Below, piece after piece: positions 62,246 through 247,500 of a stretch of 248,000 bases of DNA; position 1 is the stretch's first letter, and every line of letters begins with the position of its first letter. Under the pieces are notes generated by a model. It was not told the origin of the DNA, ran no database searches, and worked only from the letters and a program-made list of their open reading frames with translations. Both the position numbers and the translations under genes were made by a program. Source of the stretch: Octopus vulgaris (Eukaryota); NCBI GenBank assembly GCA_951406725.2, contig OX597834.1:39948001-40196000 (forward strand), in the 5' to 3' direction.

Positions 62246-62285
62246 GGATTTAATGTTTCGAGCGGAGCTCTTCGTCAGAAACATA
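62246..62285 (-). ncRNA. Minimal type I hammerhead motif (canonical core, CpG-decayed stem III)
   Basis: uuu-CUGACGA-a-gagc-ucc-gcuc-GAAA-CAUU-aaa within a Penelope-like terminus at 62140-62360. Confidence 0.55.
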
Positions 62286-63614
62286 GAAAAAGGAAAGGTC
62301 CAAGGAAGGGAAGACGGAGGGAAAAAAATCGCGAACGATACACACGCGGTCACATATTGAACTATGTATATGTATATGTGTGTGTGTGTGTGTGTGTATG
62401 TTTGTGTGTCTGTGTTTGTCCCCCTAGCATTGCTTGACAATCGATGATGGTGTGTTTATGTCCCCGTCACTTAGCGGTTCGGTGAAAGAGACCGATAGAA
62501 TAAGTGCTAGGCTTGCAAAGAATAAGTCCTGGGGTTAATATGCTTGACAAAATGTGGGTGCGTGTCACTCGTATGTGCAGCATGTGCAGGAAGAGAACCT
62601 GTTTGGCTTTGTAATTGGTTTACATGTATCTGGGTACACGTCAACACAACTATGTATGGATGAAGAGCTGTGTGTGTGTGTGTTTGTGAGTATTAGTGTG
62701 CATGCGCATGTGAGTGAGTGCATGCGCATGTGAGTGAGTGCATGCACATGTGAGTGAGTGCATGCGCGTGTGTCTGTGTGTGAGTGTGCATGTTTTTATG
62801 TGTGTGTGTGAGTGTGCATATGCATGTTTGTGTGTATGTGTGTGAGTGTGCATGTTTGTGTGAGTGCGTGTGTATTTGTGTGTGTGTGTGCCTATATTTG
62901 TTTGTGCATGCATGTATATGTGTATGTGCATGTGTATGTATTTATTTGTGTGTGTGCGTATGCACGTGTATCTATTTATGTAGCACACACACACATATGC
63001 TGTAAAGAGCACGAACCCTTTTCTCTACAATCCTTACATATATCCCCCCACACACACACACACACACACATACATACACACGCACTCTCCTCCTCTCTCA
63101 TATGCACATTCTTTCTCTTCATCCCTCTCTCTCATCTTCTTGCACACACACACACACACTTATACTCTCTCTCTCTGTCTCTCTCCCTCTCTCACACACA
63201 TCTCCCCTCTCTCCTTCTCTCTCCCATAGGATATCTGTGTGTGTCCCAAAGTGGACAGTCATGTGTTTGAGCCAATCCTGTAAGGAGAACAGGATATTAC
63301 AAGAGGGACAACAATACCAATTCTGATTGCTCTAGTTATGCTTGTTGGTGATGTGATGGTCATGATGGTGAGAATAAAAGAGAGAGACAAACGTTTGAAC
63401 TTTATGATAAGCAACAACAAAACACAATACAATACAACAAACACACAACAATATGCACGGCTAAAACAATACATAATACAAAACGAAAACAAAAACAAAA
63501 CTTATAAAATATTCTTTCCTACTCTAGGCACAAGGCCCGAAAATTATTTGGCGGGAGGAGCTAGTTAATTAGATCAACTTATATGTGTGTGTGTGTGTGT
63601 GTATATACATACAT

Positions 63615-78109: not shown

Positions 78110-78450
78110 ATTTGCCAGGGCAGGGCCAATCCATAACATTACATGACATGTCTGATTAGCCAGAGGGGCAGACCCAACCCATAACATTACATGACATGTG
78201 AGGGATTCGCCAGAGGGGCAGACCCAACCCATAACATTACCTGACATGTCAGATTCGCCAGAGGGGCAGGGCCAATCCATAGCATTATATGACATGTCAG
78301 AGATTCGCCAGAGGGGCAGACCCAACCCATAACATTACATGACATGTCGGAGATTCGCCAGAGGGGCAGGGCCAATCCATAACATTACATGACATGTCAT
78401 ATTAGCCAGAGGGGCAGACAAACCTATAACATTACATGTCATGTCTGAGG
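78110..78450. repeat. 48-50-bp minisatellite, about 7 copies
   Basis: cagaggggcag recurs at 78161, 78211, 78259, 78309, 78359, 78407. Confidence 0.9.
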
Positions 78451-78509
78451 AAGACAGGTGGTGTAGACAACAAACAGATGCATTAGTATAACGCTCAGGA
78501 AGTGAAAAA

Positions 78510-78548
78510 GTCTTTAACGTTTCGAGCCTACGCTCTTCCACAGAAAGG
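78510..78548 (-). ncRNA. Hammerhead-like motif with CUGU-N-GA core (best-preserved copy)
   Basis: cuuu-CUGUGGA-a-gagc-guag-gcuc-GAAA-CGUU-aaag. Confidence 0.6.
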
Positions 78549-79735
78549 GACACAGAAAGAAACAAGGAGCAAAAATAAAGAATGTGTAGTGGCTCACACA
78601 CGAAGGGCTTCTTTCAGTTTCCATCAACCAAATCCACTCACAAGGCTTTGGTCAGCCTGAGGCTATAATAGAAGACTCTTGCCCAGGGGTAACAGGCAGT
78701 ATTGTCCTCCCTCAAGCAGTATTGGAGGATAAAAATATACACGCACATAGATAGATACATACATATATATATATACATACATACATATACACACACGCAT
78801 ACATATATATACACACATACACATAAATATATATATATACACACAGATATATACATGCATATGTATATATACATATATATATATACACACACACACAGTG
78901 GGCTTCTTTCAGTTTTCATCTCACAAATGTTTGGTCAGCTCACGGCAATAGTAGAAGACACTTGCCAAAGGTACCAAGCAGTGAGACTGAACCCAGAATC
79001 AGGTGGCTGGGAAGCAAACATCTTAACACACAGCCATGTCAGCACCTCAACTTTTCAAATATTTCTACAGAAGCGTTGCAATCTACTGGAATTGGTATAC
79101 CTATAAACAAACATTTTCTGTTTTTTGTCAAGGTGAATTTTTTGCCACAATGTCTGGCCTATTAGCCATAATAGCTCTAATCTAAGTGGTGAGCTCCCAG
79201 AATGATTACCATGCTGAATAAAATGTTAAGCAGCATTTCCTATGACAATATGTTCTGATTTCAAATGCCGTCGACATCAACCTTGCCTCTCATCCTTTCA
79301 AGGTCAATGAAACAAATACCAGCTGCGCACTGGGGTGGATGTAATTGACTTCCCCTCCCACCAAAACTGTTGGCCCTGTACCAAAATTAGAAAGAAAATT
79401 ACTATTATTATTATTATTATTATTATTACGTACACTTGCATGCAAACACACATACGCACACCCTAATACGTTTACATAAACATAAAGCGAATGCATCTAG
79501 CACTCCCACCCTGCCATGACCACCTCCACATAACCACCCGGATAACACATGAATATAAAGCTTGCAAATTGTGTGCAAGTGTACATGAATGTGTACGTTA
79601 ATGTGTGTGTGTGTGAGTGTGTGTGTGTGAAGTGGGTGTATGCAGTATAGTTGGTGTATATATGTGTGTGACGTGTATATGCAGATGTGGCGTGCGTATA
79701 TGCTATTTGTACAAGATTTCATATGATGATGATGA

Positions 79736-81890: not shown

Positions 81891-83879
81891 ATATATTTTG
81901 TTTAAACACCACAGCTGGAGAAATTAATATGTTCTGGCCAAGCAGTTAATTCAGTGTCAAATATCTTAACAAAGCAGAGAGAATGGAGCTATCCAAACGA
82001 TGACAAATTGATTTCAGACATAATTACATCCTCCCAACGTCCATTTTCCCAAGCTTGCATGAGTTGGACAGAGTTTCTCGAAGCAGATTTTCTTATGACC
82101 AGATGCCCTTCCTGTCACCAACCCTCACCTGTTTCCAAGCAAAGTAATTGGAAAACAAACTCTTTTTTTACATCCCATCCATCCCTGGGGCCTACAACAT
82201 CTCACTCGCATTTACAGAAGCGGTGAAATGCCAGATTCTGTGACACACATACCTTTTTTCCTCTTCCTCTCTCACCCCGCCTCTCTACCATCAATATCAA
82301 CGGATTAAAGGAAGTGACTAGACATTGAGAATCAAGTAAAACTGGGTCATCACCAACTCCGCCACGAACACGGTTGACTGCCCTCCGTGGTTCTTGGTTC
82401 AAACAGTGTTTATTATATACAGTATTGATTTTTCAATTTGCTATTTCAAATATCAGTTTTCACGATTATCTCTCAGTAAAATACACAATTTTCTTGTAAC
82501 AAATGGGACTCAGAGAAGACATAAATCTCTTGTCAGAACATTTTTTTTTTATAGTTTGTTGTAGTAACATTGTAGTAATGTGGCTTCACTAGCAACTGCT
82601 GGTTGCCATGGCAATTATAGTTTGTTGCTTGATGAGGTTGCAGGTATGGGTGCGTGGTTAAGAAGATTGGTTTTAGAAGCATGTGGTTTTGGGTTCTGTT
82701 CCACAGCATGGCATCTTGGCCAAAAGCCTTCTGCTAGAGACCCAGACTGGGCAAAGACTTGTGAGTGGATCTGATAGATGGAAATTGAAAGAAGCCCATC
82801 ATGTCTATGAATGTACATATATATATATACACACACAGACACATACATATTATATACAAACATATATATATACATATATATATATATATACAAACGATGG
82901 CAGAAACGTTAGCACGCCGGGCGAAATGCAGCGGTATTTCGTCTGTCATGTTATGAGTTCAAATTCTGCCAAGGTCAACTTTGCCTTTCATCCTTTCGGG
83001 GTCGATAAATAAATTACCAGTTTCACACTGGGGTCAATCTAATCGACTTAATCCCTTTGTCTGTCCTTGTTTGTCCCCTCTATGCTTAGCCCCTTGTGGG
83101 TAGTAAAGAAATATATATATATACACACATATGCATACATACACACACATATATATACATACACACATACAAACATACATACACACACATATACACATAC
83201 ACACATATATACATACATACACACATTTATATACATATATGCATACATACACATACATATACATACATTCATATATACATACATACCAGTTTTCGCCAAC
83301 CATCTAACCCATACCAACATGGAAAGCAGAGGCTAAATGATAATGGTGATGATATATATATATTCTCTTCTCAGTTCCCATGCTTATTACAACAGTCCTT
83401 GTAAAAGAACTCAGAAGGTTGGACCTCCAGCCAGGCCTTCTGCAATATTCTTAAAGCCAGGAACTTTTCAGTATGCCCACATATGTATACACACACACTC
83501 ACTCACACACACACACACACATACACATATATTGATCACAACTGTCCTATGAATGGCATCATGAAACTCTGAGTAACAGTTTGTTGTGATGTTTCTACAA
83601 CCTTAATAAAAAAGTATATTACTCTGCCTTTGGTATTTGAGTACTATTTTCCACACCTTACTTTTCATTTACATGCTTGCTCATATATATATATATAAAT
83701 ATATACATCCTGTTGTGTCTGGGGAGAGTCATTTTCTTTTTGTGCCTTATAATTTCCACTTATTTCTTATTTTTATTTTCCTAAAATTTTCGTTGCGTCT
83801 TGCAACCTTTTCAATAGTCTTGAATATGCTTCAACACATGAACTCATATAAAGAATCTTGCATACCAAATCCCAAAACG

Positions 83880-153282: not shown

Positions 153283-154421
153283 GCTAATGTGTAGATATAT
153301 ATGCTAAGTCCACACAGAAGTTGTACTCAGAAGAGCAACTCAGGTGTAGCTGTGTGGTAAGAAGTTGGCTTCCCAACCACATGGTTCTGGGTTCAGTCCC
153401 ACTGCATAGACCCTTGGGAAGATGTCTTCTATAACTTCAAGATGATCAAAACCTTGTGTGTGTGTATATATACTCTTCGGGAATTTGGGGAGTGGGGGTT
153501 CTCCCTCTCCTCTCTACTTTCTGTAGATGAGCACAGGCTCGAAACATCGAAGATTTTTCATTTTCCCTGAGTGTCAAACTAATAGACCTTGTCTGTTGTT
153601 CCCTCCCCTGTCTCTGTTTTTTTGGGTTTTTGTACAGTTTTGAACCATTTGTGTGTGTGTGTGTGTGTTTGTAAGCATATTTGTCTTTTATCTTTCATCT
153701 TTTACTTGTTTTAGTCATTGGGTTGCGGCCATACTGGAGCACTGTTCTGAAAGGTTTTGGTCCCACTGCCGACACTACTTAAATCGTTTTGAAGTCTGAA
153801 CTGCTAAAGTACATGGATGTAAACAAACCCACACTGCCTGTCAAGGTCTTTCATTATCTTTTACTTGTTTTAGTCATTAGACTATGGCCATGCTGGAGTA
153901 CTGCCTGGAAGAATTTTTAATCAAATAAATCATCCCCGGTACTTATTTTTTAAAAATATGCTTACAAACACACTTACGCCAGTGTGTTTACGCCAATTCA
154001 GCAAAAATGACTGCTAGGATAAATACCAGGCTTAAAACCAAAATCCAAATGGGCGCTGGGGTCGATTCGTTCAACTAAAATTCTTTCAGGTGGTGCCACA
154101 GCATGGTTGCAGTCCAATGCCTGAGACAAGTAAAAACCGAAAAAATAAAAAGGGTCATTCTCAAAATCAATTGAAACAAAGGCTTCGTAATTCTCCAGAA
154201 AAATGGTGAGAGTGCTTCCACTGTTTACAAACACCTAACTGTAACACAAAAACAAGGTCCTCTGATCTATGGATAGATTCTTCCACTTTTTTTTTCTTTC
154301 TCTCCTAGCACCGGAGAGCCTGGAAAAGGTCACAAAGTTACTTCCTTCCTCAGCTGAAGACTAATGAAACAAACAACAAATGAAGTCCACAGAGATGATG
154401 ATGGTGATGGTGATGGTGATG

Positions 154422-163506: not shown

Positions 163507-163961
163507 TAGTAAATCCAAAAACGAAGAACAAACATAAAAAACTACAATGCGAGGACACGGTACATATAAAGTATTAGCAGACACTCAGGGAAGGAAAGAA
163601 AGCTGGTTTAATGTTTCGAGCAGATGCTCTTCTTTGGAAACAGATGAAAGTCCAATAGAAGGGAAGACGGAGGAAGAAAATCGCCGATTCACATATAGTT
163701 ACATTTTGAAAATCCTATATACACACACACATACACACACAGAGGGTGCTGAAAAGTTCCCAGCTTTAGGTAAAGAAAAATACAGGAGGATCCGTTAATT
163801 ATGATTTTATTCAGCATATTCCTCCTCTCAGATTCATGTGCTTATTGCGATGGTCCTTCAGTTTCTCTAAGCCCAATAAAAGAACTTGAAAGATTTGGGT
163901 ACCAACCAGGCCTTTCATGATACCCTTAAAGCTAGGAACTTTTCAGCATCCCCTCATACAT

Positions 163962-242402: not shown

Positions 242403-242891
242403 GTGTGTCTGTGTGTTATATGTGTGTGTGTGTGTGTTTGTGATACATTTATCTCAGAACCTCCCCAAAACTAGAGAATGTTATCTCAGCTTAATAAGAT
242501 TAAACATGAAGAAAAACGACCAATATCAATGTAAGTAATCTCCACAAATGGTAAATCTACAAAAAATTTTCACTTTACAAGAATGAAGGACAACTAAAAT
242601 ATAAAAATTCACAAACAAGCATAATCAGCCAAACATATATCACTATGGTTTCAACACCTGGACTCTGTGTGTGTGTGTGTGTTAAAGTAATGAGAAAAGG
242701 CAAACAGTTAGTCAAGGCAGGCTCAAAGGGAAGTCACCACTAGCCATTTTTTGAGCAAGACAATCACACAGCTACAACTTCAAATGCTGTTCTAAGTGGA
242801 ATTTTGGTGGCACACCTATTTGAGTATATTCATTAGCTTAACTCATCTTGATGAAAATTCCTCATATCCTCTTGTTTTTTTTTTTCTGTGT

Positions 242892-242932
242892 CCCTTTCTG
242901 TAGAAGAGCATAGGCTCGAAATGTAAAAGACT
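242892..242932 (+). ncRNA. Hammerhead-like motif with CUGU-N-GA core
   Basis: cuuu-CUGUAGA-a-gagc-auag-gcuc-GAAA-UGUA-aaag; further decayed copies at 153521 and 178791. Confidence 0.5.
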
Positions 242933-244557
242933 TTTTCAATTCTTGAGCGTTATACACCACCTGTCTTCGTCTTTTGTTTTTTATCACACACACATACAGA
243001 CAGGTGTATTTAAAGATCCAAGGGAAAATATTATACCTGTCCTTACCATACAGCCATGTCTGTACCTCTCTCATAAATATATACACACGAGAGGGTGCTG
243101 AAATGTTCCTGGCTTTAAGGGTATTGTGAAAGGCCTGGTCGAAGGCCCAGCCTTCTGATTTCTTTTACAGGGCTTAGAAAAACTGAAGGACCATGTGTGA
243201 AAATGAGTAACAGTTTTGCAAAAATTTTGCAGCTTTAATACAAGAATATATCATCATCATCATCATTTAATATCTGTTGTCCATGCTGGCATGGGTTGGA
243301 TGGTTCGGCAGAGGTGGTATGCTGGAAGGCTGCACCAGACTCCAGTCTGATTTGCCATGGTTTTCTACAGCTGGAAGCCCTTCCTAATCCCAACCACTCT
243401 GATGGTTAGGTGCTTTTATGTGCCACCAGCATGGGTGCCATTTGCATGACACGGGCATGGCTACCAATCTGTGTGACACTGGTATCTGCCATGACTGCGA
243501 TTTTGCTTAGCTTGATGGGTCACCTTCTCAAGCACAGCATAATGCCAATGGTCTTGATATATTATATATCACCGTGACCGACCAGGCTATCAGATGTTGT
243601 TACACATCGCTGGTCACAATGTGCTTTGCATTGTTTTAGCCTTCAAATGACGCCACCCTGCTGGCTAAGCAAGCAGGCCAACAGTAGAAAGAGTGAGAGA
243701 AAGTTGTGGCGAAAGAGTACAGCAGGGATCAACACCATCCCCTACCGGAGCCTCGTGGAGCTTTAGGTGTTTTTGCTCAATAAACACTCACAACGCCCGG
243801 TCTGGGAATCGAAACTGAGATCCTACGACCACGAGTTCGCTGCCCTATCCACTGGGACATTGCACTTCCACATATTATATTATAAGGAAACGTAAAGGGG
243901 ACAGGTGGAGGAGGAGATTGGGGGTGGGTGGCTTGAGGATGGAGGATGCCCAAAACCAGGTAAGAAGGCAAGATGGTGTGAGAGCGATTGCTGTAAGAGT
244001 GAGGTCGATCTGACTGCCCCCACCCTGTTAATGGGGACAAATCTGGATTTAAAATATTGGAATTCACCATCATCAATCCACTGTTAATTACGAATGTGTG
244101 TGCGTGCATGGGTGTGCATGTGTATGTCTGTGTGTCTTCTTGCTTAGACATCACGTCATAGTTGTAAACAAGTGTCCCTGTCGTACAAGTGGCTTTGTTC
244201 GTTTTCCCTCTTCCATGTGAAAACAAGTCCAGCCAAGGAGAAAATTTACCTTGATTAGAAGCAGGTGAGGGTTGGTGATTGGGAAAGCATCCAGGCATAG
244301 GAAATCTGTCTTGGTGAATTTCATCTAATTCATACACGCATGGAAAAATAGGCATTAAAAGAATGAGGATGAGAATGGCTATGATGATGATGATGATGAT
244401 GATGATGCTAAATAATTATACAAACACCTCTCTCTCTCCCCCTCTCTCTTTCCCCCATCCCCACACACACGCAGAAGTTAATCAATAGAACGATTTCTCA
244501 ATTAATCTGTCAATGAAAAGATATCGGTAGAGATGAGGGAGAAAGAGAGAGACAGAC

Positions 244558-244595
<38 letters not shown>

Positions 244596-247500
244596 AACGA
244601 TAGAGAGATAAAGAGATGAGTTACAGTTAAAGAGAAATATAGATATGAGAGAGAGAGAGGGAGAGAAGGGAGAGAAAGGGGAGAGAGAGGCTGACAGACA
244701 GACAGGCAGTGAGACAGGGAATAATCCAATTTACTGATGCAGAAAAGAAATGTAAAATTGTGTCAAGATAATCCATTTGAAATCCTTCAGTTTGAAAGAT
244801 CTGCCATTGTCTTCAAAGTAAGATAACAGTTCCAGATTGGTGTGATGTCACAGAATGGCAGGATGGTGATTGTGATGGTGATGGAATTGATGATGGTGGT
244901 AGTGGTGGTGGTGGTGGTGGTGGTGATGGTGTTTTGGTTAATGGCGTTGGCAACAGTGATGGTGGTGGCGGTGGTGGTGTTGTCGGTGGTTGCAGTGAAG
245001 ATTGTTGTGATGGTAGTTGCCATGGTGGTGGTGGTGGTTGTGTAAGAGTAATGGTAGACTTCTACATATAATGTCATTGTGATATTTCAATCATGTCACA
245101 AGTTCAAATCCCTTTGACGTCAGCTTAACCCTTTTAACCTTTCTGGGGGGAGTCTATAAAAATAAATTCTGGGATTGAGTTAAATCAATTGCTTGTGCCT
245201 CCCAACACTCCCTGGATGTTATGCACTTGTGCCAACAGGTGGCAGCACGAGTAGTAATAACACAAGGGTCCCATACAGCCAGAACTACCTGTTATTCTTA
245301 GGAAACTCAATCTGTGATTGGTGATTGATTTAAATCATTAAATTGATTGATTGTGCCTCTCCACACTCATCAAGTATTCTGCTCTTGTGCCAACAGGTAG
245401 CAGCACAAGTAGACAGAACACAAGAGCAATACATCTTGTATTTAGATATGGTCCTGTCTGCTCTGAGTTCAAATACAGCCAGCATTGTATCTGCCCATCA
245501 TCGTTGGGGTAAAATAAAACAGCCCTTTTTATTATGAGCACAAGGCATGAAACTTCGATGGGGAAGGGGATAATCAATTACGTCGACCCCAGTGCACAAC
245601 TGGTACCTATTTTATCGGCCCCTCAAAAGGATGAAAGGCAAAGTTGACCTAGGCAGTATTTGAACTCAGGACCCAAAGATAGACAAAATTCTACCAAGCA
245701 TATTTTTTCCAGGTATGCTAACGATTCAGCCAGACAACCTGGCACAATCTGAAGATTGGTTCCCTCAACTGTATTTATTTAGCGCTTTCACCCCTTTCAG
245801 GAATTCATCCGATGATTGAAACAAACAATAAAAAGATAAAACAAACAGTTAACCTAAATATTATTGATCTGATAAGCGAGGCCCCTACTTCAGTGTAGAG
245901 ACATGGCCCCTATTTCAGAGTAAACCATACAATTAACCAAAAATATAAAACTAACTTAGCAGTTCAGCAAAAGGAATAAAGACCAGAAATTTTATTTACA
246001 AAAAAAAAACATACTGGGATCAATTCGTTTGACAAAAACCCATCGAGGTGGTGCCCCAGCATGGCGACAGTCAAATGACTGAAACAACCCACGTCTCTAC
246101 AATCATTATATCCTATTTACCTTGACCTTTGTCCCCCATCCCCCCCTGCCGTTTCTCTCTGTTCTTTTAACCCTATTTTCTCTTTCATTCTTTCTAGAAC
246201 CCTTTTTTGTGTTTTTCCCCTCTGTTTCTCCAACGCCAACCATTCCCCTTATTTCCCTCTGCTTCTCATCCTCATCCTTTATCTTCCTGTTTTCATCTTC
246301 TCATTCAACCAGAATCCTCCATTGGCTCATCCAACGACAACAATGGGAAAGAGACAGACAGGCTGACGCACAGACAGACAGAAAGGCAACCCATTTCCCC
246401 CGAGAGATTCAAAGAGAAATCCGATTCCAATGGTAAATGCGGAAGTTACAACAAAGCAAAGTGTGAAGAACTGCTCCAGTGTGTGTATATATATATATAT
246501 ATATACAAATGTATAAAGATATATGCGATCACATATACATATCCCTCGGTGCAGGATTCCATGGCTACATGTGTGCACAAACACACATGTGCATGTAGAC
246601 ACACACATGCACACACGCATTCACACATGCAAATACTGAGATGTGTTCACAGATAAATGCACTCAGGTAGGATACATAAATACATACATGTATACACACG
246701 TGCATGTACGTGTGTGCATGTATGTATGTGTGTGTATGTCTGTGTGTGTATGTATGTGTGTGTATGTATGTGTGTGTATGTATGTGTGTGTATGTATGTA
246801 TGTGTGTATGTATGTGTGTATGTATGTATGTGTGTGTGTATGTATGTATGTATGATGTATGTATGAGTGTGTGCATGTATGTATGTGTGTGTATGTATGT
246901 GTGTGTGTGTATGTATGTGTGTGTGTGTATACACACATGCATATGTAGAAATGCAGACAGGTAACCAATAAAGAAGCCACTAAGTGGTCACTTGATCTGC
247001 TAGAAACAACAGCAAAATCTCAATGTAATTACATGCTACCGTCTCAAAGAATGAAGTAATGTAATCCTAGATATACCCAGTGTGACAAAAAAAAAATGAA
247101 AGAATAAATAAATAGATAGCATGATCAGAATTGAAATATCTGCTGGACCAAGACTGACCTAGGGTTAAACAACCCCAAAAAACTTCAAAATCCAGTTTGA
247201 AATATTGGGAATATGATTCACTAAAACTCTTGAATAACATGGTGCCCCAGCATGGCCAGAGTCAAATAACTGAAACCAGTATAAGAATACATACAAACAC
247301 ATACAAGCATACACATATATAATGTGTGTATCTGTATACATGTGCCATTGGCAAATCTTCTTCTCCATCTTTGGTCTTTACTCTTTCTCCTTTCCGACGA
247401 AGAGCTTTGCTCAAAATGTCAAACTCTCTCCTTACACCAAGCATTGAGCTAATATGTTTCTTGTACATGTCCTCAGGTTTTTTTTTTTTTTTTTATTATT

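What the first reader, a model, noticed from the sequence alone, without database searches (positions are those of the whole stretch)
78505..78550. Dispersed hammerhead-like family with a fixed CUGU-N-GA core (A6 to U)
Seen: at least 7 copies of an about 200-bp element in TA/TG microsatellites (cores at 42101 +, 78537 -, 93763 -, 153521 +, 178791 +, 226477 -, 242898 +). They share the scaffold cuuu-CUGU-N-GA-a-gagc-NNNN-gcuc-GAAA-CGUH-aaag. Position 7 varies freely (C, G, U, A), as in true hammerheads, while position 6 is U in every copy. Deviations in stem III are the TG/CA products of CpG decay. Established: Penelope-like elements carry minimal type I hammerheads whose palindromic stem III (ACGU) lets them cleave as dimers; A6 is almost invariant, and the few natural variants change metal dependence. 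Inference: a successful octopus retroelement lineage (possibly retrozyme-like) amplified with a non-canonical core. It is either an undescribed active hammerhead variant or a catalytically dead fold kept as an RT-recognition signal. I cannot verify novelty without a literature or Rfam search.
Basis: partly seen in the sequence, partly recalled or inferred. Interest (0 to 1): 0.8.

Follow-up and report, generated by a model that had tools for sequence, protein, structure and literature searches.

The report
Retroelement hammerhead motif with A6-to-U core
A short repeat that sits in TA/TG microsatellites carries the minimal hammerhead-ribozyme motif typical of Penelope-like retroelements, but its youngest and commonest subfamily has a normally essential core adenine replaced by uracil while the rest of the core stays conserved, so it offers a natural test of whether these elements need ribozyme cleavage.

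Summary
Seven dispersed copies of a unit of about 160-200 bp carry cuuu-CUGU-N-GA-a-gagc-NNNN-gcuc-GAAA-CGU-H-aaag, against 0.04 pattern matches expected by chance. Apart from U at position 6, the motif has the published hallmarks of the minimal type I hammerhead of metazoan Penelope-like elements (PLEs). These are a 4-bp helix I, an unpaired base after A9, an invariant G10.1-C11.1 pair, a palindromic ACGU, and H17 that is never G.

A profile search found four older relatives in the window, and all four keep A6. One of them (62278) has a fully canonical CUGACGA core. U6 is therefore a derived marker of one subfamily, not a family-wide rule.

Within the U6 clade, 1 of 77 catalytic-core cells has changed. 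The helices show 5% change, the hammerhead's free positions 27%, and the flanks 18-31%. The helices also show compensatory changes. This suggests hammerhead-type constraint continued after the A6U change.

The units are single and dispersed, so they are not retrozyme-like tandems. Their ends do not coincide with the cleavage site. No reverse transcriptase (RT) or GIY-YIG endonuclease partner lies in the window.

Whether the U6 core still cleaves cannot be decided by computation. I rate it a new variant of a known kind, of moderate interest, resting on 11 copies from one window.

The parts
78431..78592 (-). U6 unit, the target copy. The hammerhead-like motif is at 78512-78547, with U6 at 78540 and the predicted cut between 78516 and 78515. 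It lies directly 3' of a tRNA-SINE body. A 50-bp minisatellite (78118-78445) cuts off its 3' end.
42041..42225 (+). U6 unit. Motif 42097-42132, CUGUCGA core, stem III decayed to AUGU. (TG)n/(TA)n lies 5' and (TA/CA)n lies 3'.
93647..93835 (-). U6 unit. Motif 93736-93773, CUGUUGA core, a 2-nt insertion in helix II and an intact ACGU. It is preceded by an inverted SINE 3' module plus microsatellite.
153501..153640 (+). U6 unit of the older sub-lineage. Motif 153517-153552, CUGUAGA core, unpaired U instead of A, stem III decayed to ACAU. It lies 3' of a tRNA-SINE head.
178757..178903 (+). U6 unit of the older sub-lineage, decayed. Motif 178786-178822, with G12 changed to A and helix I disrupted.
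226366..226522 (-). U6 unit, closest to the consensus. Motif 226452-226487, with a compensatory C-G to U-A change in helix II. It lies 3' of a tRNA-SINE body plus (TG)n(TA)n.
242863..242989 (+). U6 unit with an internal deletion of about 23 nt downstream of the motif. Motif 242894-242929.
62152..62317 (-). A6 relative with a fully canonical core: guuu-CUGACGA-a-gagc-ucc-gcuc-GAAA-CAU-U-aaau. Motif 62248-62282. It has the same unit layout and microsatellite flanks.
163534..163673 (-). A6 relative, decayed core CCAAAGA (U4 to C, G5 to A). Motif 163606-163641. Helix I closes with G-C instead of C-G.
247373..247487 (+). A6 relative, decayed core CCGACGA with G12 changed to A. Motif 247390-247424.
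146148..146238 (-). A6 relative with a CUGAUGA core, G12 changed to A and helix II decayed. Motif 146186-146220. Its right flank (aagcattaaactaatac) resembles that of the U6 clade.

Best explanation
The feature is a family of short, non-coding, dispersed repeats of about 160-200 bp that sit in TA/TG/CA microsatellites. About 60-70 nt from its 5' end each unit carries a minimal type I hammerhead motif of the kind found in the terminal repeats of Penelope-like elements.

The ancestral core was canonical (CUGAYGA), as four older copies in the window show. One lineage acquired A6-to-U and then produced most of the copies seen here, 7 of 11. U6 is therefore a subfamily-diagnostic substitution inherited from source copies.

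In that lineage the other ten catalytic positions and both helices stayed much better conserved than the interleaved free positions and the flanks. The hammerhead-shaped RNA module therefore still appears to have mattered to the source elements after the change.

Inferred mechanism, not shown:
- The unit RNA is copied in trans by a PLE reverse transcriptase and GIY-YIG endonuclease that prefers (TA)n targets.
- The hammerhead module acts as a folded, probably protein-assisted, processing or recognition element.
- Plain Mg2+-dependent self-cleavage is probably strongly weakened by U6, and is evidently not needed for spread.
For: Copies and chance expectation.

PLE-type hallmarks are all present. 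They are those listed in PMC4209133: a 4-bp helix I, an unpaired base after A9, G10.1-C11.1 in 11 of 11 copies, palindromic ACGU with only CpG-type decay, and H17 never G in 11 of 11.

Canonical A6 relatives share the unit layout. U6 and A6 copies separate on a single tree branch with support 83/83.

Helices: 93% of cells are paired, against 19-53% when the partner strand is slid. Three pairs show changes on both sides, and 0 of 500 shuffles reach the observed covariation score.

Site classes in the U6 clade:
- core: 1 of 77 cells changed
- helices: 6 of 112
- free positions: 17 of 63
- right flank: 96 of 526
- Fisher tests: core against right flank 1.7e-5, core against free positions 3.8e-6

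By columns, 1 of 11 core columns vary against 59 of 79 in the right flank, p = 4.5e-5.

Literature:
- (TA)n is a preferred target of some PLE clades (Naiads; a Zn-finger linker was proposed to give the same bias in Neptune), and hammerheads lie near PLE 3' ends (PMC8557442).
- Hammerhead catalytic mutants do not impair PLE target-primed reverse transcription in vitro, and that ribozyme needs the protein to cleave (PMC11167929).
- Changes at A6 lower activity, and the natural A6C variant prefers Mn2+ (PMC3088659, PMC7151607).

A second, canonical PLE-type minimal hammerhead with an inverted truncated copy at 125039-125178 shows that such elements are present in this genome.
Against: - There are only 11 copies from one 248-kb window, and they are related by descent. 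The Fisher tests therefore overstate independence.
- No RT or GIY-YIG ORF or remnant was found in the window, so the PLE partner is inferred only from motif type and target preference.
- Monomer minimum-free-energy folds are not the hammerhead fold, and their z-scores are unremarkable. This is also true of the canonical relatives.
- Rfam hammerhead models give no hit. They also miss the canonical A6 motifs, so this result is uninformative.
- Five units abut SINE fragments on their 5' side only. Simple insertion into a SINE microsatellite does not fully explain this.
- Singleton changes are also depleted in the core: 1 observed against about 8 expected at the flank rate. Neutral decay after insertion should not spare the core. 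This fits only if most differences arose in active source lineages.
Confidence: 0.65

Rival explanations
1. The U6 motif is a catalytically competent natural hammerhead variant, which would be the first natural A6U. It would cleave as a dimer, perhaps only with Mn2+ or with the element's protein, and selection keeps the core because cleavage is still used.
For: - Hammerhead-specific conservation persists after A6U: core 1 of 77 changed against free positions 17 of 63, with N7 free and H17 never G.
- Helices show compensatory changes.
- The natural A6C variant keeps good activity in Mn2+ (PMC7151607).
- The PLE hammerhead is protein-assisted (PMC11167929).
- Descriptor searches that require CUGANGA would have missed such variants (PMC4209133).
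Against: - Changes at A6 give low activity (PMC3088659).
- Metazoan PLE minimal hammerheads are already poor cleavers with a canonical core.
- Unit ends do not map to the cut site, and the units are not tandem, so no second copy lies in cis for dimer formation.
- Only 2 of 7 copies keep the ACGU palindrome, although this is decay after insertion.
Confidence: 0.22
2. The motif is a dead relic. U6 killed the ribozyme in one source copy that happened to amplify. The motif has no remaining function, and its apparent conservation is a sampling or alignment effect.
For: - U6 invariance in 7 related copies is expected from common descent alone.
- Hammerhead catalysis is dispensable for PLE insertion in vitro.
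- Naiad PLEs thrive without canonical hammerheads.
- The flanks are T-rich and harder to align.
Against: - The free positions interleaved with the core (N7, the unpaired base, loop II, H17) vary at flank-like rates while the ten other core positions do not.
- Compensatory changes occur in both helices.
- The older A6 copies show what a neutrally decaying core looks like: 5 of 44 cells changed.
Confidence: 0.15
3. The unit is the 3' module of a composite tRNA-derived SINE, or a tail copied from an AP-endonuclease LINE such as the CR1-like element in the window. It would be mobilised by a LINE through its microsatellite tail rather than by a PLE.
For: - Three U6 units follow a tRNA-SINE head or body plus microsatellite in the same orientation, far more often than chance.
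- The units end in (TA)n, like LINE and SINE tails that end in simple repeats.
- An intact CR1-like LINE is present.
Against: - About 40 of 53 SINE bodies carry a different 3' module, and only two of those 53 are followed by this unit, with a third unit behind a SINE head fragment.
- Two family members are preceded by an inverted SINE 3' module, and others have no SINE at all.
- The CR1-like 3' UTR ends at (ATT)n and shares nothing with the unit.
- The motif architecture is the one specific to PLE repeats.
Confidence: 0.15
4. The resemblance is chance: an ordinary hairpin in a repeat that happens to look like a hammerhead.
For: The motif is short, the Rfam models do not report it, and its minimum-free-energy folds are unremarkable.
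Against: - Relatives in the same family carry canonical CUGACGA and CUGAUGA cores.
- All four emergent PLE minimal-hammerhead features are present.
- The conservation pattern follows the hammerhead's own rules.
- Rfam also misses the canonical controls.
Confidence: 0.03

Closest known systems
Minimal type I hammerheads (min-HHRs) in the terminal repeats of metazoan Penelope-like elements (Cervera and de la Pena 2014, PMC4209133; Lunse, Weinberg and Breaker 2017, known only from its citation)
   Same: Helix I of 4-5 bp, an unpaired base between A9 and G10.1, a conserved G10.1-C11.1 pair, GAAA followed by a palindromic CG and U-H so that helix III forms only in a dimer, many heterogeneous dispersed single copies, and association with retroelements that target microsatellites.
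   Different: Position 6 is U instead of the conserved A in the main subfamily. Helix II is 4 bp, against 6-8 bp in the published schistosome and Drosophila virilis examples. No RT/GIY-YIG ORF or terminal-repeat arrangement is linked to the units in this window.
Metazoan non-LTR retrozymes (Cervera and de la Pena 2020, PMC7229834; Li et al. 2026 preprint, 10.64898/2026.07.22.740005)
   Same: Short non-autonomous elements carrying type I hammerheads, thought to derive from and depend on PLEs.
   Different: Retrozymes are tandem repeats whose monomers are delimited by the cleavage site and are expressed as circular RNAs. These units are single and dispersed, are bounded by microsatellites, and have the cut site in their interior.
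Schistosome Sm-alpha / Sj-alpha SINE-like hammerhead elements (Ferbeyre et al. 1998; Laha et al. 2000; cited in PMC6765202)
   Same: Dispersed, high-copy, short non-coding retroposons with an internal hammerhead.
   Different: Those elements carry a polymerase III promoter and a canonical, efficient hammerhead with loop-loop contacts. Here the unit contains no A or B boxes, and the motif is minimal with U6.
Natural A6C hammerhead of phage Bcep176 (Perreault et al. 2011, PMC3088659; Naghdi et al. 2020, PMC7151607)
   Same: A natural substitution at core position 6. This shows that position 6 variants can survive in nature and can shift metal preference towards Mn2+.
   Different: That case is a single bacteriophage locus with a full three-helix ribozyme and C6. 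This one is U6 in a eukaryotic high-copy minimal motif. My library search found no natural A6U hammerhead.

Membership tests
Hammerhead ribozyme, type I minimal (PLE-type) | Catalytic core C3 U4 G5 A6 N7 G8 A9 ... G12 A13 A14 A15.1 ... U16.1 H17 | tested here: not met
   Ten of the eleven core positions are present in the U6 copies, but position 6 is U in all seven. The family relative at 62248-62282 has the full canonical core.
Hammerhead ribozyme, type I minimal (PLE-type) | Helices I and II supported by pairing and covariation | tested here: met
   93% of 88 cells are paired. Three pairs show changes on both sides, including C-G, G-C and G-U in helix I and C-G to U-A in helix II. No shuffle of 500 reaches the covariation score, and slid controls pair at 19-53%. 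The sample is small: 11 sequences and 8 pairs.
Hammerhead ribozyme, type I minimal (PLE-type) | Unpaired nucleotide between A9 and 10.1, and a conserved G10.1-C11.1 pair | tested here: met
   An unpaired A is present in 10 of 11 copies and a U in the remaining one. G10.1-C11.1 is present in 11 of 11. These features are defined in PMC4209133.
Hammerhead ribozyme, type I minimal (PLE-type) | Palindromic 15.2-16.2 (ACGU) that allows a dimeric helix III | tested here: met
   ACGU is intact in the copies at 78543 and 93769. All nine deviations are AUGU or ACAU, the products of CpG decay.
Hammerhead ribozyme, type I minimal (PLE-type) | Self-cleavage after H17 | not testable with these tools
   This needs in vitro transcription or RNA end mapping.
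Hammerhead ribozyme, type I minimal (PLE-type) | Match to the Rfam hammerhead covariance models | tested here: inconclusive
   There is no hit at gathering score across the window or at E up to 10 around the target. The canonical minimal motifs at 125079 and 62278 are also missed at E up to 10.
Penelope-like element (terminal repeat or non-autonomous derivative) | Linked ORF with a telomerase-like RT and a GIY-YIG endonuclease | tested here: not met
   Among the ORFs of at least 180 aa that were scanned, only a LINE with AP endonuclease and RT was found. A regex scan of all six frames found no GIY-YIG signature. The scan was crude, so decayed remnants could have been missed.
Penelope-like element (terminal repeat or non-autonomous derivative) | Insertion bias for microsatellites, (TA)n in some clades | tested here: met
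   All 11 family members abut TA/TG/CA microsatellite on at least one side, most on both. The bias is described in PMC8557442.
Penelope-like element (terminal repeat or non-autonomous derivative) | Partial tandem or inverted 5'-truncated arrangement | tested here: not met
   This arrangement is not seen at the U6 units. It is seen at the separate canonical hammerhead at 125039-125178, where 63-nt inverted arms are 92% complementary.
Metazoan non-LTR retrozyme | Head-to-tail tandem monomers, each with a hammerhead and delimited by the cut site | tested here: not met
   The copies are single and lie 14-60 kb apart. The unit's ends lie about 60-70 nt 5' and 110-120 nt 3' of the cut site.
tRNA-derived SINE | A polymerase III tRNA-like head as an integral part of the element | tested here: not met
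   A SINE head or body precedes only 3 of the 11 units. Two units are preceded by an inverted SINE 3' module. Of the 53 SINE bodies in the window only two are followed by this unit, and most carry a different 3' module.

The most novel reading that the evidence does not exclude
The CUGUNGA core is a functional natural hammerhead variant, which would be the first natural A6U. It would still cleave, as a dimer and perhaps only with Mn2+ or with the element's RT-endonuclease protein. Selection would be keeping it in a retroelement lineage that, extrapolating from 7 copies in 248 kb, may number tens of thousands of copies in this genome.
Probability: 0.2. Interest if true: 0.75.

Novelty: new variant of a known kind. 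Interest (0 to 1): 0.5.

Why it matters
The role of hammerhead motifs in Penelope-like elements is still unknown. They cleave poorly in vitro, catalytic mutants still insert in vitro, and one large PLE clade lacks them.

This lineage changed an almost invariant catalytic base yet kept amplifying, and it kept the rest of the core and both helices under hammerhead-like constraint. That makes it a natural separation-of-function case.
- If U6 transcripts cleave, the accepted core consensus and the descriptors built on it are too narrow.
- If they do not cleave, the conserved fold must serve something other than cleavage, such as protein recognition.

Either result is reachable with a simple transcription assay and a genome-wide census.

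Tried and rejected
- Rfam scans gave no hammerhead hit. I rejected this as evidence because the canonical minimal motifs in the same window are also missed.
- Exact-pattern scans of the JGI metagenome contigs and the IMG/VR viral contigs for TTTCTGWNGAAGAGCNNNNGCTCGAAA found nothing, so no copies from outside the window could be obtained.
- I tried to reach more DNA of the same genome through the CR1-like LINE protein. The exact protein is not on record. Its relatives lie on metagenome contigs of 2.7-5 kb, too short to help. They served only to show that the LINE's 3' UTR ends at (ATT)n.
- Monomer folding gave alternative hairpins and non-significant z-scores. An apparent N7 covariation with a downstream U-run held in only 2 of 7 copies, so I dropped it.
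- I rejected alternative registers that would restore a canonical CUGANGA in the U6 copies by reading the sequence; none fits.
- I considered a B-box-like reading of GGCTCGAAAC as a polymerase III promoter. I rejected it because there is no A box, the helix II change is compensated on the opposite strand, and it would not explain the conserved CUGU-GA.
- I suspected that the copies at 42101 and 242898 were one insertion spread by a mariner-like element. Their shared downstream sequence turned out to be a separate microsatellite-associated repeat with six copies, and their upstream flanks are unrelated.
- A first flank blast was swamped by microsatellite hits and was of little use.
- The Lunse et al. 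2017 paper could not be read because it is not held.
Full report
**Observation**

The sequence is as described. On the minus strand at 78547-78512 the window reads cuuu-CUGUGGA-a-gagc-guag-gcuc-GAAA-CGU-U-aaag. A pattern search for CTGTNGANGAGCNNNNGCTCGAAA with up to 3 mismatches returns 7 matches against 0.04 expected from shuffles. The seventh reader copy (93769) has a 2-nt insertion in helix II, and alignment, blastn and nhmmer recover it. Position 6 is U in all seven, and position 7 is C, G, U, A, U, A, A. Every deviation from ACGU in stem III is AUGU or ACAU, the CpG-decay products.

**Anatomy and context**

- The conserved unit is about 160-200 bp long. It begins with a short segment (gat(t)cgctagccactacaca) and a T/C-rich stretch.
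- The hammerhead-like motif follows about 60-70 nt from the 5' end.
- Downstream lies a well conserved stretch (ttcctgagcgttatactaatacatctgtttgttg ... cacctgtcttcgtcttttgttttttttcataaa).
- The unit ends in ctatatata, which runs into a (TA)n or (CA)n microsatellite. A TG/TA microsatellite also lies at the 5' side.
- The copies are single and dispersed, 14-60 kb apart, never tandem and not circularly permuted.
- The predicted cleavage site lies in the interior of the unit, not at its ends.
- The window is crowded with a tRNA-derived SINE that has an internal TA/TG microsatellite, with about 53 bodies present.
- Three U6 units lie directly 3' of such a SINE body in the same orientation. One U6 unit and one A6 relative are preceded by the reverse complement of the SINE's 3' module.
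- Because both orientations occur, and other members have no SINE next to them, I read the unit as an independent element that shares microsatellite sites with the SINE. It is not the SINE's own tail.
- One point stays unexplained: the SINE fragment is always on the 5' side of the unit, and the expected other half of the SINE is never found on the 3' side.

**The family is larger, and U6 is derived**

A simple descriptor scan with position 6 left free found a canonical motif of the same build at 62278: guuu-CUGACGA-a-gagc-ucc-gcuc-GAAA-CAU-U-aaau. It lies inside a unit with the same layout and microsatellite flanks.

An nhmmer profile of the whole unit then found 11 members. They are the seven U6 copies plus four more diverged ones, and all four have A at position 6:
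- 62278, with an intact core
- 163637, with core CCAAAGA
- 247400, with core CCGACGA and G12 changed to A
- 146200, with core CUGAUGA and G12 changed to A

On a maximum-likelihood tree the U6 and A6 copies separate on one branch with support 83/83. A6 is therefore ancestral and U6 marks one subfamily. Within that subfamily, two copies (153521 and 178791) are much more diverged than the other five. The U6 lineage was therefore probably productive over some time. The invariance of U6 in seven related copies is what common descent predicts, and by itself it says nothing about selection.

**Is it a hammerhead?**

Cervera and de la Pena (PMC4209133) describe the minimal hammerheads of metazoan Penelope-like elements. 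Their features are:
- a helix I of 4-5 bp
- an unpaired nucleotide between A9 and 10.1
- a highly conserved G10.1-C11.1 pair
- palindromic 15.2-16.2 positions, so that helix III forms only between two copies

All of these are present here. The unpaired base is A in 10 of 11 copies. G10.1-C11.1 is present in 11 of 11. H17 is never G in 11 of 11.

For the eight base pairs of helices I and II, 93% of cells pair, against 19-53% when the partner strand is slid. Three pairs have changes on both sides: C-G, G-C and G-U at the end of helix I, and C-G to U-A in helix II of copy 226483. None of 500 shuffles reaches the observed covariation score.

Rfam reports no hammerhead. As a control, it also misses the canonical minimal motifs at 62278 and 125079 at E up to 10. 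That negative result therefore carries no weight. The one defining feature that fails is A6.

**Conservation pattern**

The table gives the fraction of cells that differ from the majority state in the seven U6 copies.

| Site class | Changed cells | Fraction |
|---|---|---|
| 11 catalytic positions | 1 of 77 | 1.3% |
| 16 helix positions | 6 of 112 | 5.4% |
| 9 free positions (N7, unpaired base, loop II, 15.2/16.2, H17) | 17 of 63 | 27% |
| Right flank | 96 of 526 | 18% |
| Left flank | 69 of 225 | 31% |

- The single core change is G12 to A in copy 178791.
- Fisher tests give 1.7e-5 for core against right flank and 3.8e-6 for core against free positions.
- Counting variable columns instead of cells gives 1 of 11 in the core, 59 of 79 in the right flank (p = 4.5e-5) and 7 of 9 in the free positions (p = 0.0045).
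- Leaving out the CpG-prone free positions still gives about 21% by my hand count.
- The four older A6 copies show 5 of 44 core cells changed. That is what a decaying core looks like.

The free positions are interleaved with the core, so neither alignment error nor a locally low mutation rate explains the contrast. My reading is that most differences among copies arose in active source lineages in which the hammerhead-shaped module was under purifying selection, and that this continued after A6U.

Three caveats apply. There are only seven copies. They are related by descent. And singleton changes are also depleted in the core (1 observed against about 8 expected), which makes sense only if 'private' changes in this small sample are really sub-lineage changes.

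**What moves it**

No reverse transcriptase or GIY-YIG endonuclease belonging to a PLE is present in the window. The only intact retroelement ORF is a CR1-like LINE with AP endonuclease and RT at 125261-127912. Its 3' UTR ends at (ATT)n and shares nothing with the unit. PLE dependence is therefore inferred from three things:
- The motif type matches that of PLE terminal repeats.
- Some PLE clades are documented to prefer (TA)n microsatellite targets, with hammerheads near the element's 3' end (PMC8557442).
- A second, canonical PLE-type minimal hammerhead lies in the window at 125039-125084. It has a 63-nt inverted partial copy beside it, the inverted 5'-truncated arrangement described for PLEs.

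**How it probably works**

Shown:
- The motif is hammerhead-derived.
- U6 is derived from A6.
- The U6 lineage amplified.
- Constraint follows hammerhead rules.

Inferred:
- The unit RNA is copied in trans by a PLE enzyme at (TA)n sites.
- The hammerhead module acts as a folded processing or recognition element, probably with protein help.

Substitutions at A6 lower activity (PMC3088659). The natural A6C variant is poor in Mg2+ but good in Mn2+ (PMC7151607). Plain Mg2+ cleavage by the U6 form is therefore probably weak.

Spread without efficient cleavage agrees with two published findings. Hammerhead catalytic mutants do not affect PLE target-primed reverse transcription in vitro, and that ribozyme cleaves only with protein present (PMC11167929). 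Naiad PLEs proliferate without canonical hammerheads (PMC8557442). Whether U6 retains some cleavage cannot be settled by computation. I put that at about 0.2.

**Novelty and verdict**

My library search found no natural A6U hammerhead. Published PLE hammerhead searches fix CUGANGA in the descriptor, as the authors themselves note, so such variants would have been missed.

I file the feature as a new variant of a known kind. It works like a PLE minimal hammerhead module, but it fails the strict core definition at position 6. It is neither a retrozyme nor an integral SINE part. Interest is moderate. It offers a natural separation between hammerhead fold and hammerhead catalysis in an element class whose ribozyme function is still open, but the evidence rests on 11 copies from one window. 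The source organism was not verified. The dominant SINE looks cephalopod-like from my memory only. The genome-wide copy number, in the tens of thousands, is an extrapolation.

Noticed in passing
window 125039-125178 (-): A canonical PLE-type minimal hammerhead lies at 125039-125084: gacac-CUGAUGA-a-GGCUGG-agggtata-UCAGCC-GAAA-CGU-U-guguu. An inverted 63-nt partial copy, 92% complementary, lies at 125116-125178. It sits just beyond the (ATT)n tail of a LINE and looks like a head-to-head truncated PLE insertion. It is the only copy in the window.
   Followed up: partly
window 125261-127912 (-): An intact 883-aa ORF of a CR1-like LINE carries AP endonuclease and RT domains. Its closest relatives (59-81% identity) are on short marine metagenome contigs, and avian CR1 proteins match at about 33%. 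The 3' UTR motif gtgcacctgagcac followed by (ATT)n is shared with a TARA contig relative.
   Followed up: partly
window 31512-31616 (-): A U6 spliceosomal snRNA gene, at 78 bits against a gathering score of 44. It is the only Rfam match at gathering score in the whole window.
   Followed up: no
window-wide, e.g. 226490-226700 (-), 78600-78990 (-): A tRNA-derived SINE has about 53 bodies in 248 kb. Its layout is head, body (ending ggaaactgaaagaagccc), an internal TA/TG microsatellite and, in about 40 copies, a long 3' module. Several copies end at the microsatellite.
   Followed up: partly
units at 78543, 226483, 153521, 93769, 62278: Where a hammerhead unit abuts a SINE fragment, the fragment is always on the unit's 5' side, three times in the same orientation and twice inverted. 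The complementary half of the SINE is never found on the unit's 3' side. This could reflect template switching at microsatellites, target deletion, or SINEs inserting next to the units. It is unresolved.
   Followed up: partly
window 78118-78445: A minisatellite with a 50-bp period, 6.7 copies and 85% matches replaces the last roughly 40 bp of the target unit.
   Followed up: no
window 42300-42440, 243085-243230, 83330-83470, 163800-163945, 181975-182120, 217475-217620: A repeat starting gagggg-tgctgaaaagttcctggctttaaggg resembles the 3' end of a mariner-type transposase gene, and some copies end in ...GEYVE-stop. It has six copies, each starting right at a microsatellite. Two lie 3' of U6 units, separated from them by about 80-120 bp of microsatellite or other sequence, and one lies inverted 5' of the A6 unit at 163637.
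   Followed up: partly
window 78512-78547 and other U6 motifs: Position N7 shows all four bases among seven otherwise well conserved motifs. This is more variation than any flank column shows. Only the C-to-U changes can be attributed to CpG decay of an ancestral C7-G8.
   Followed up: partly
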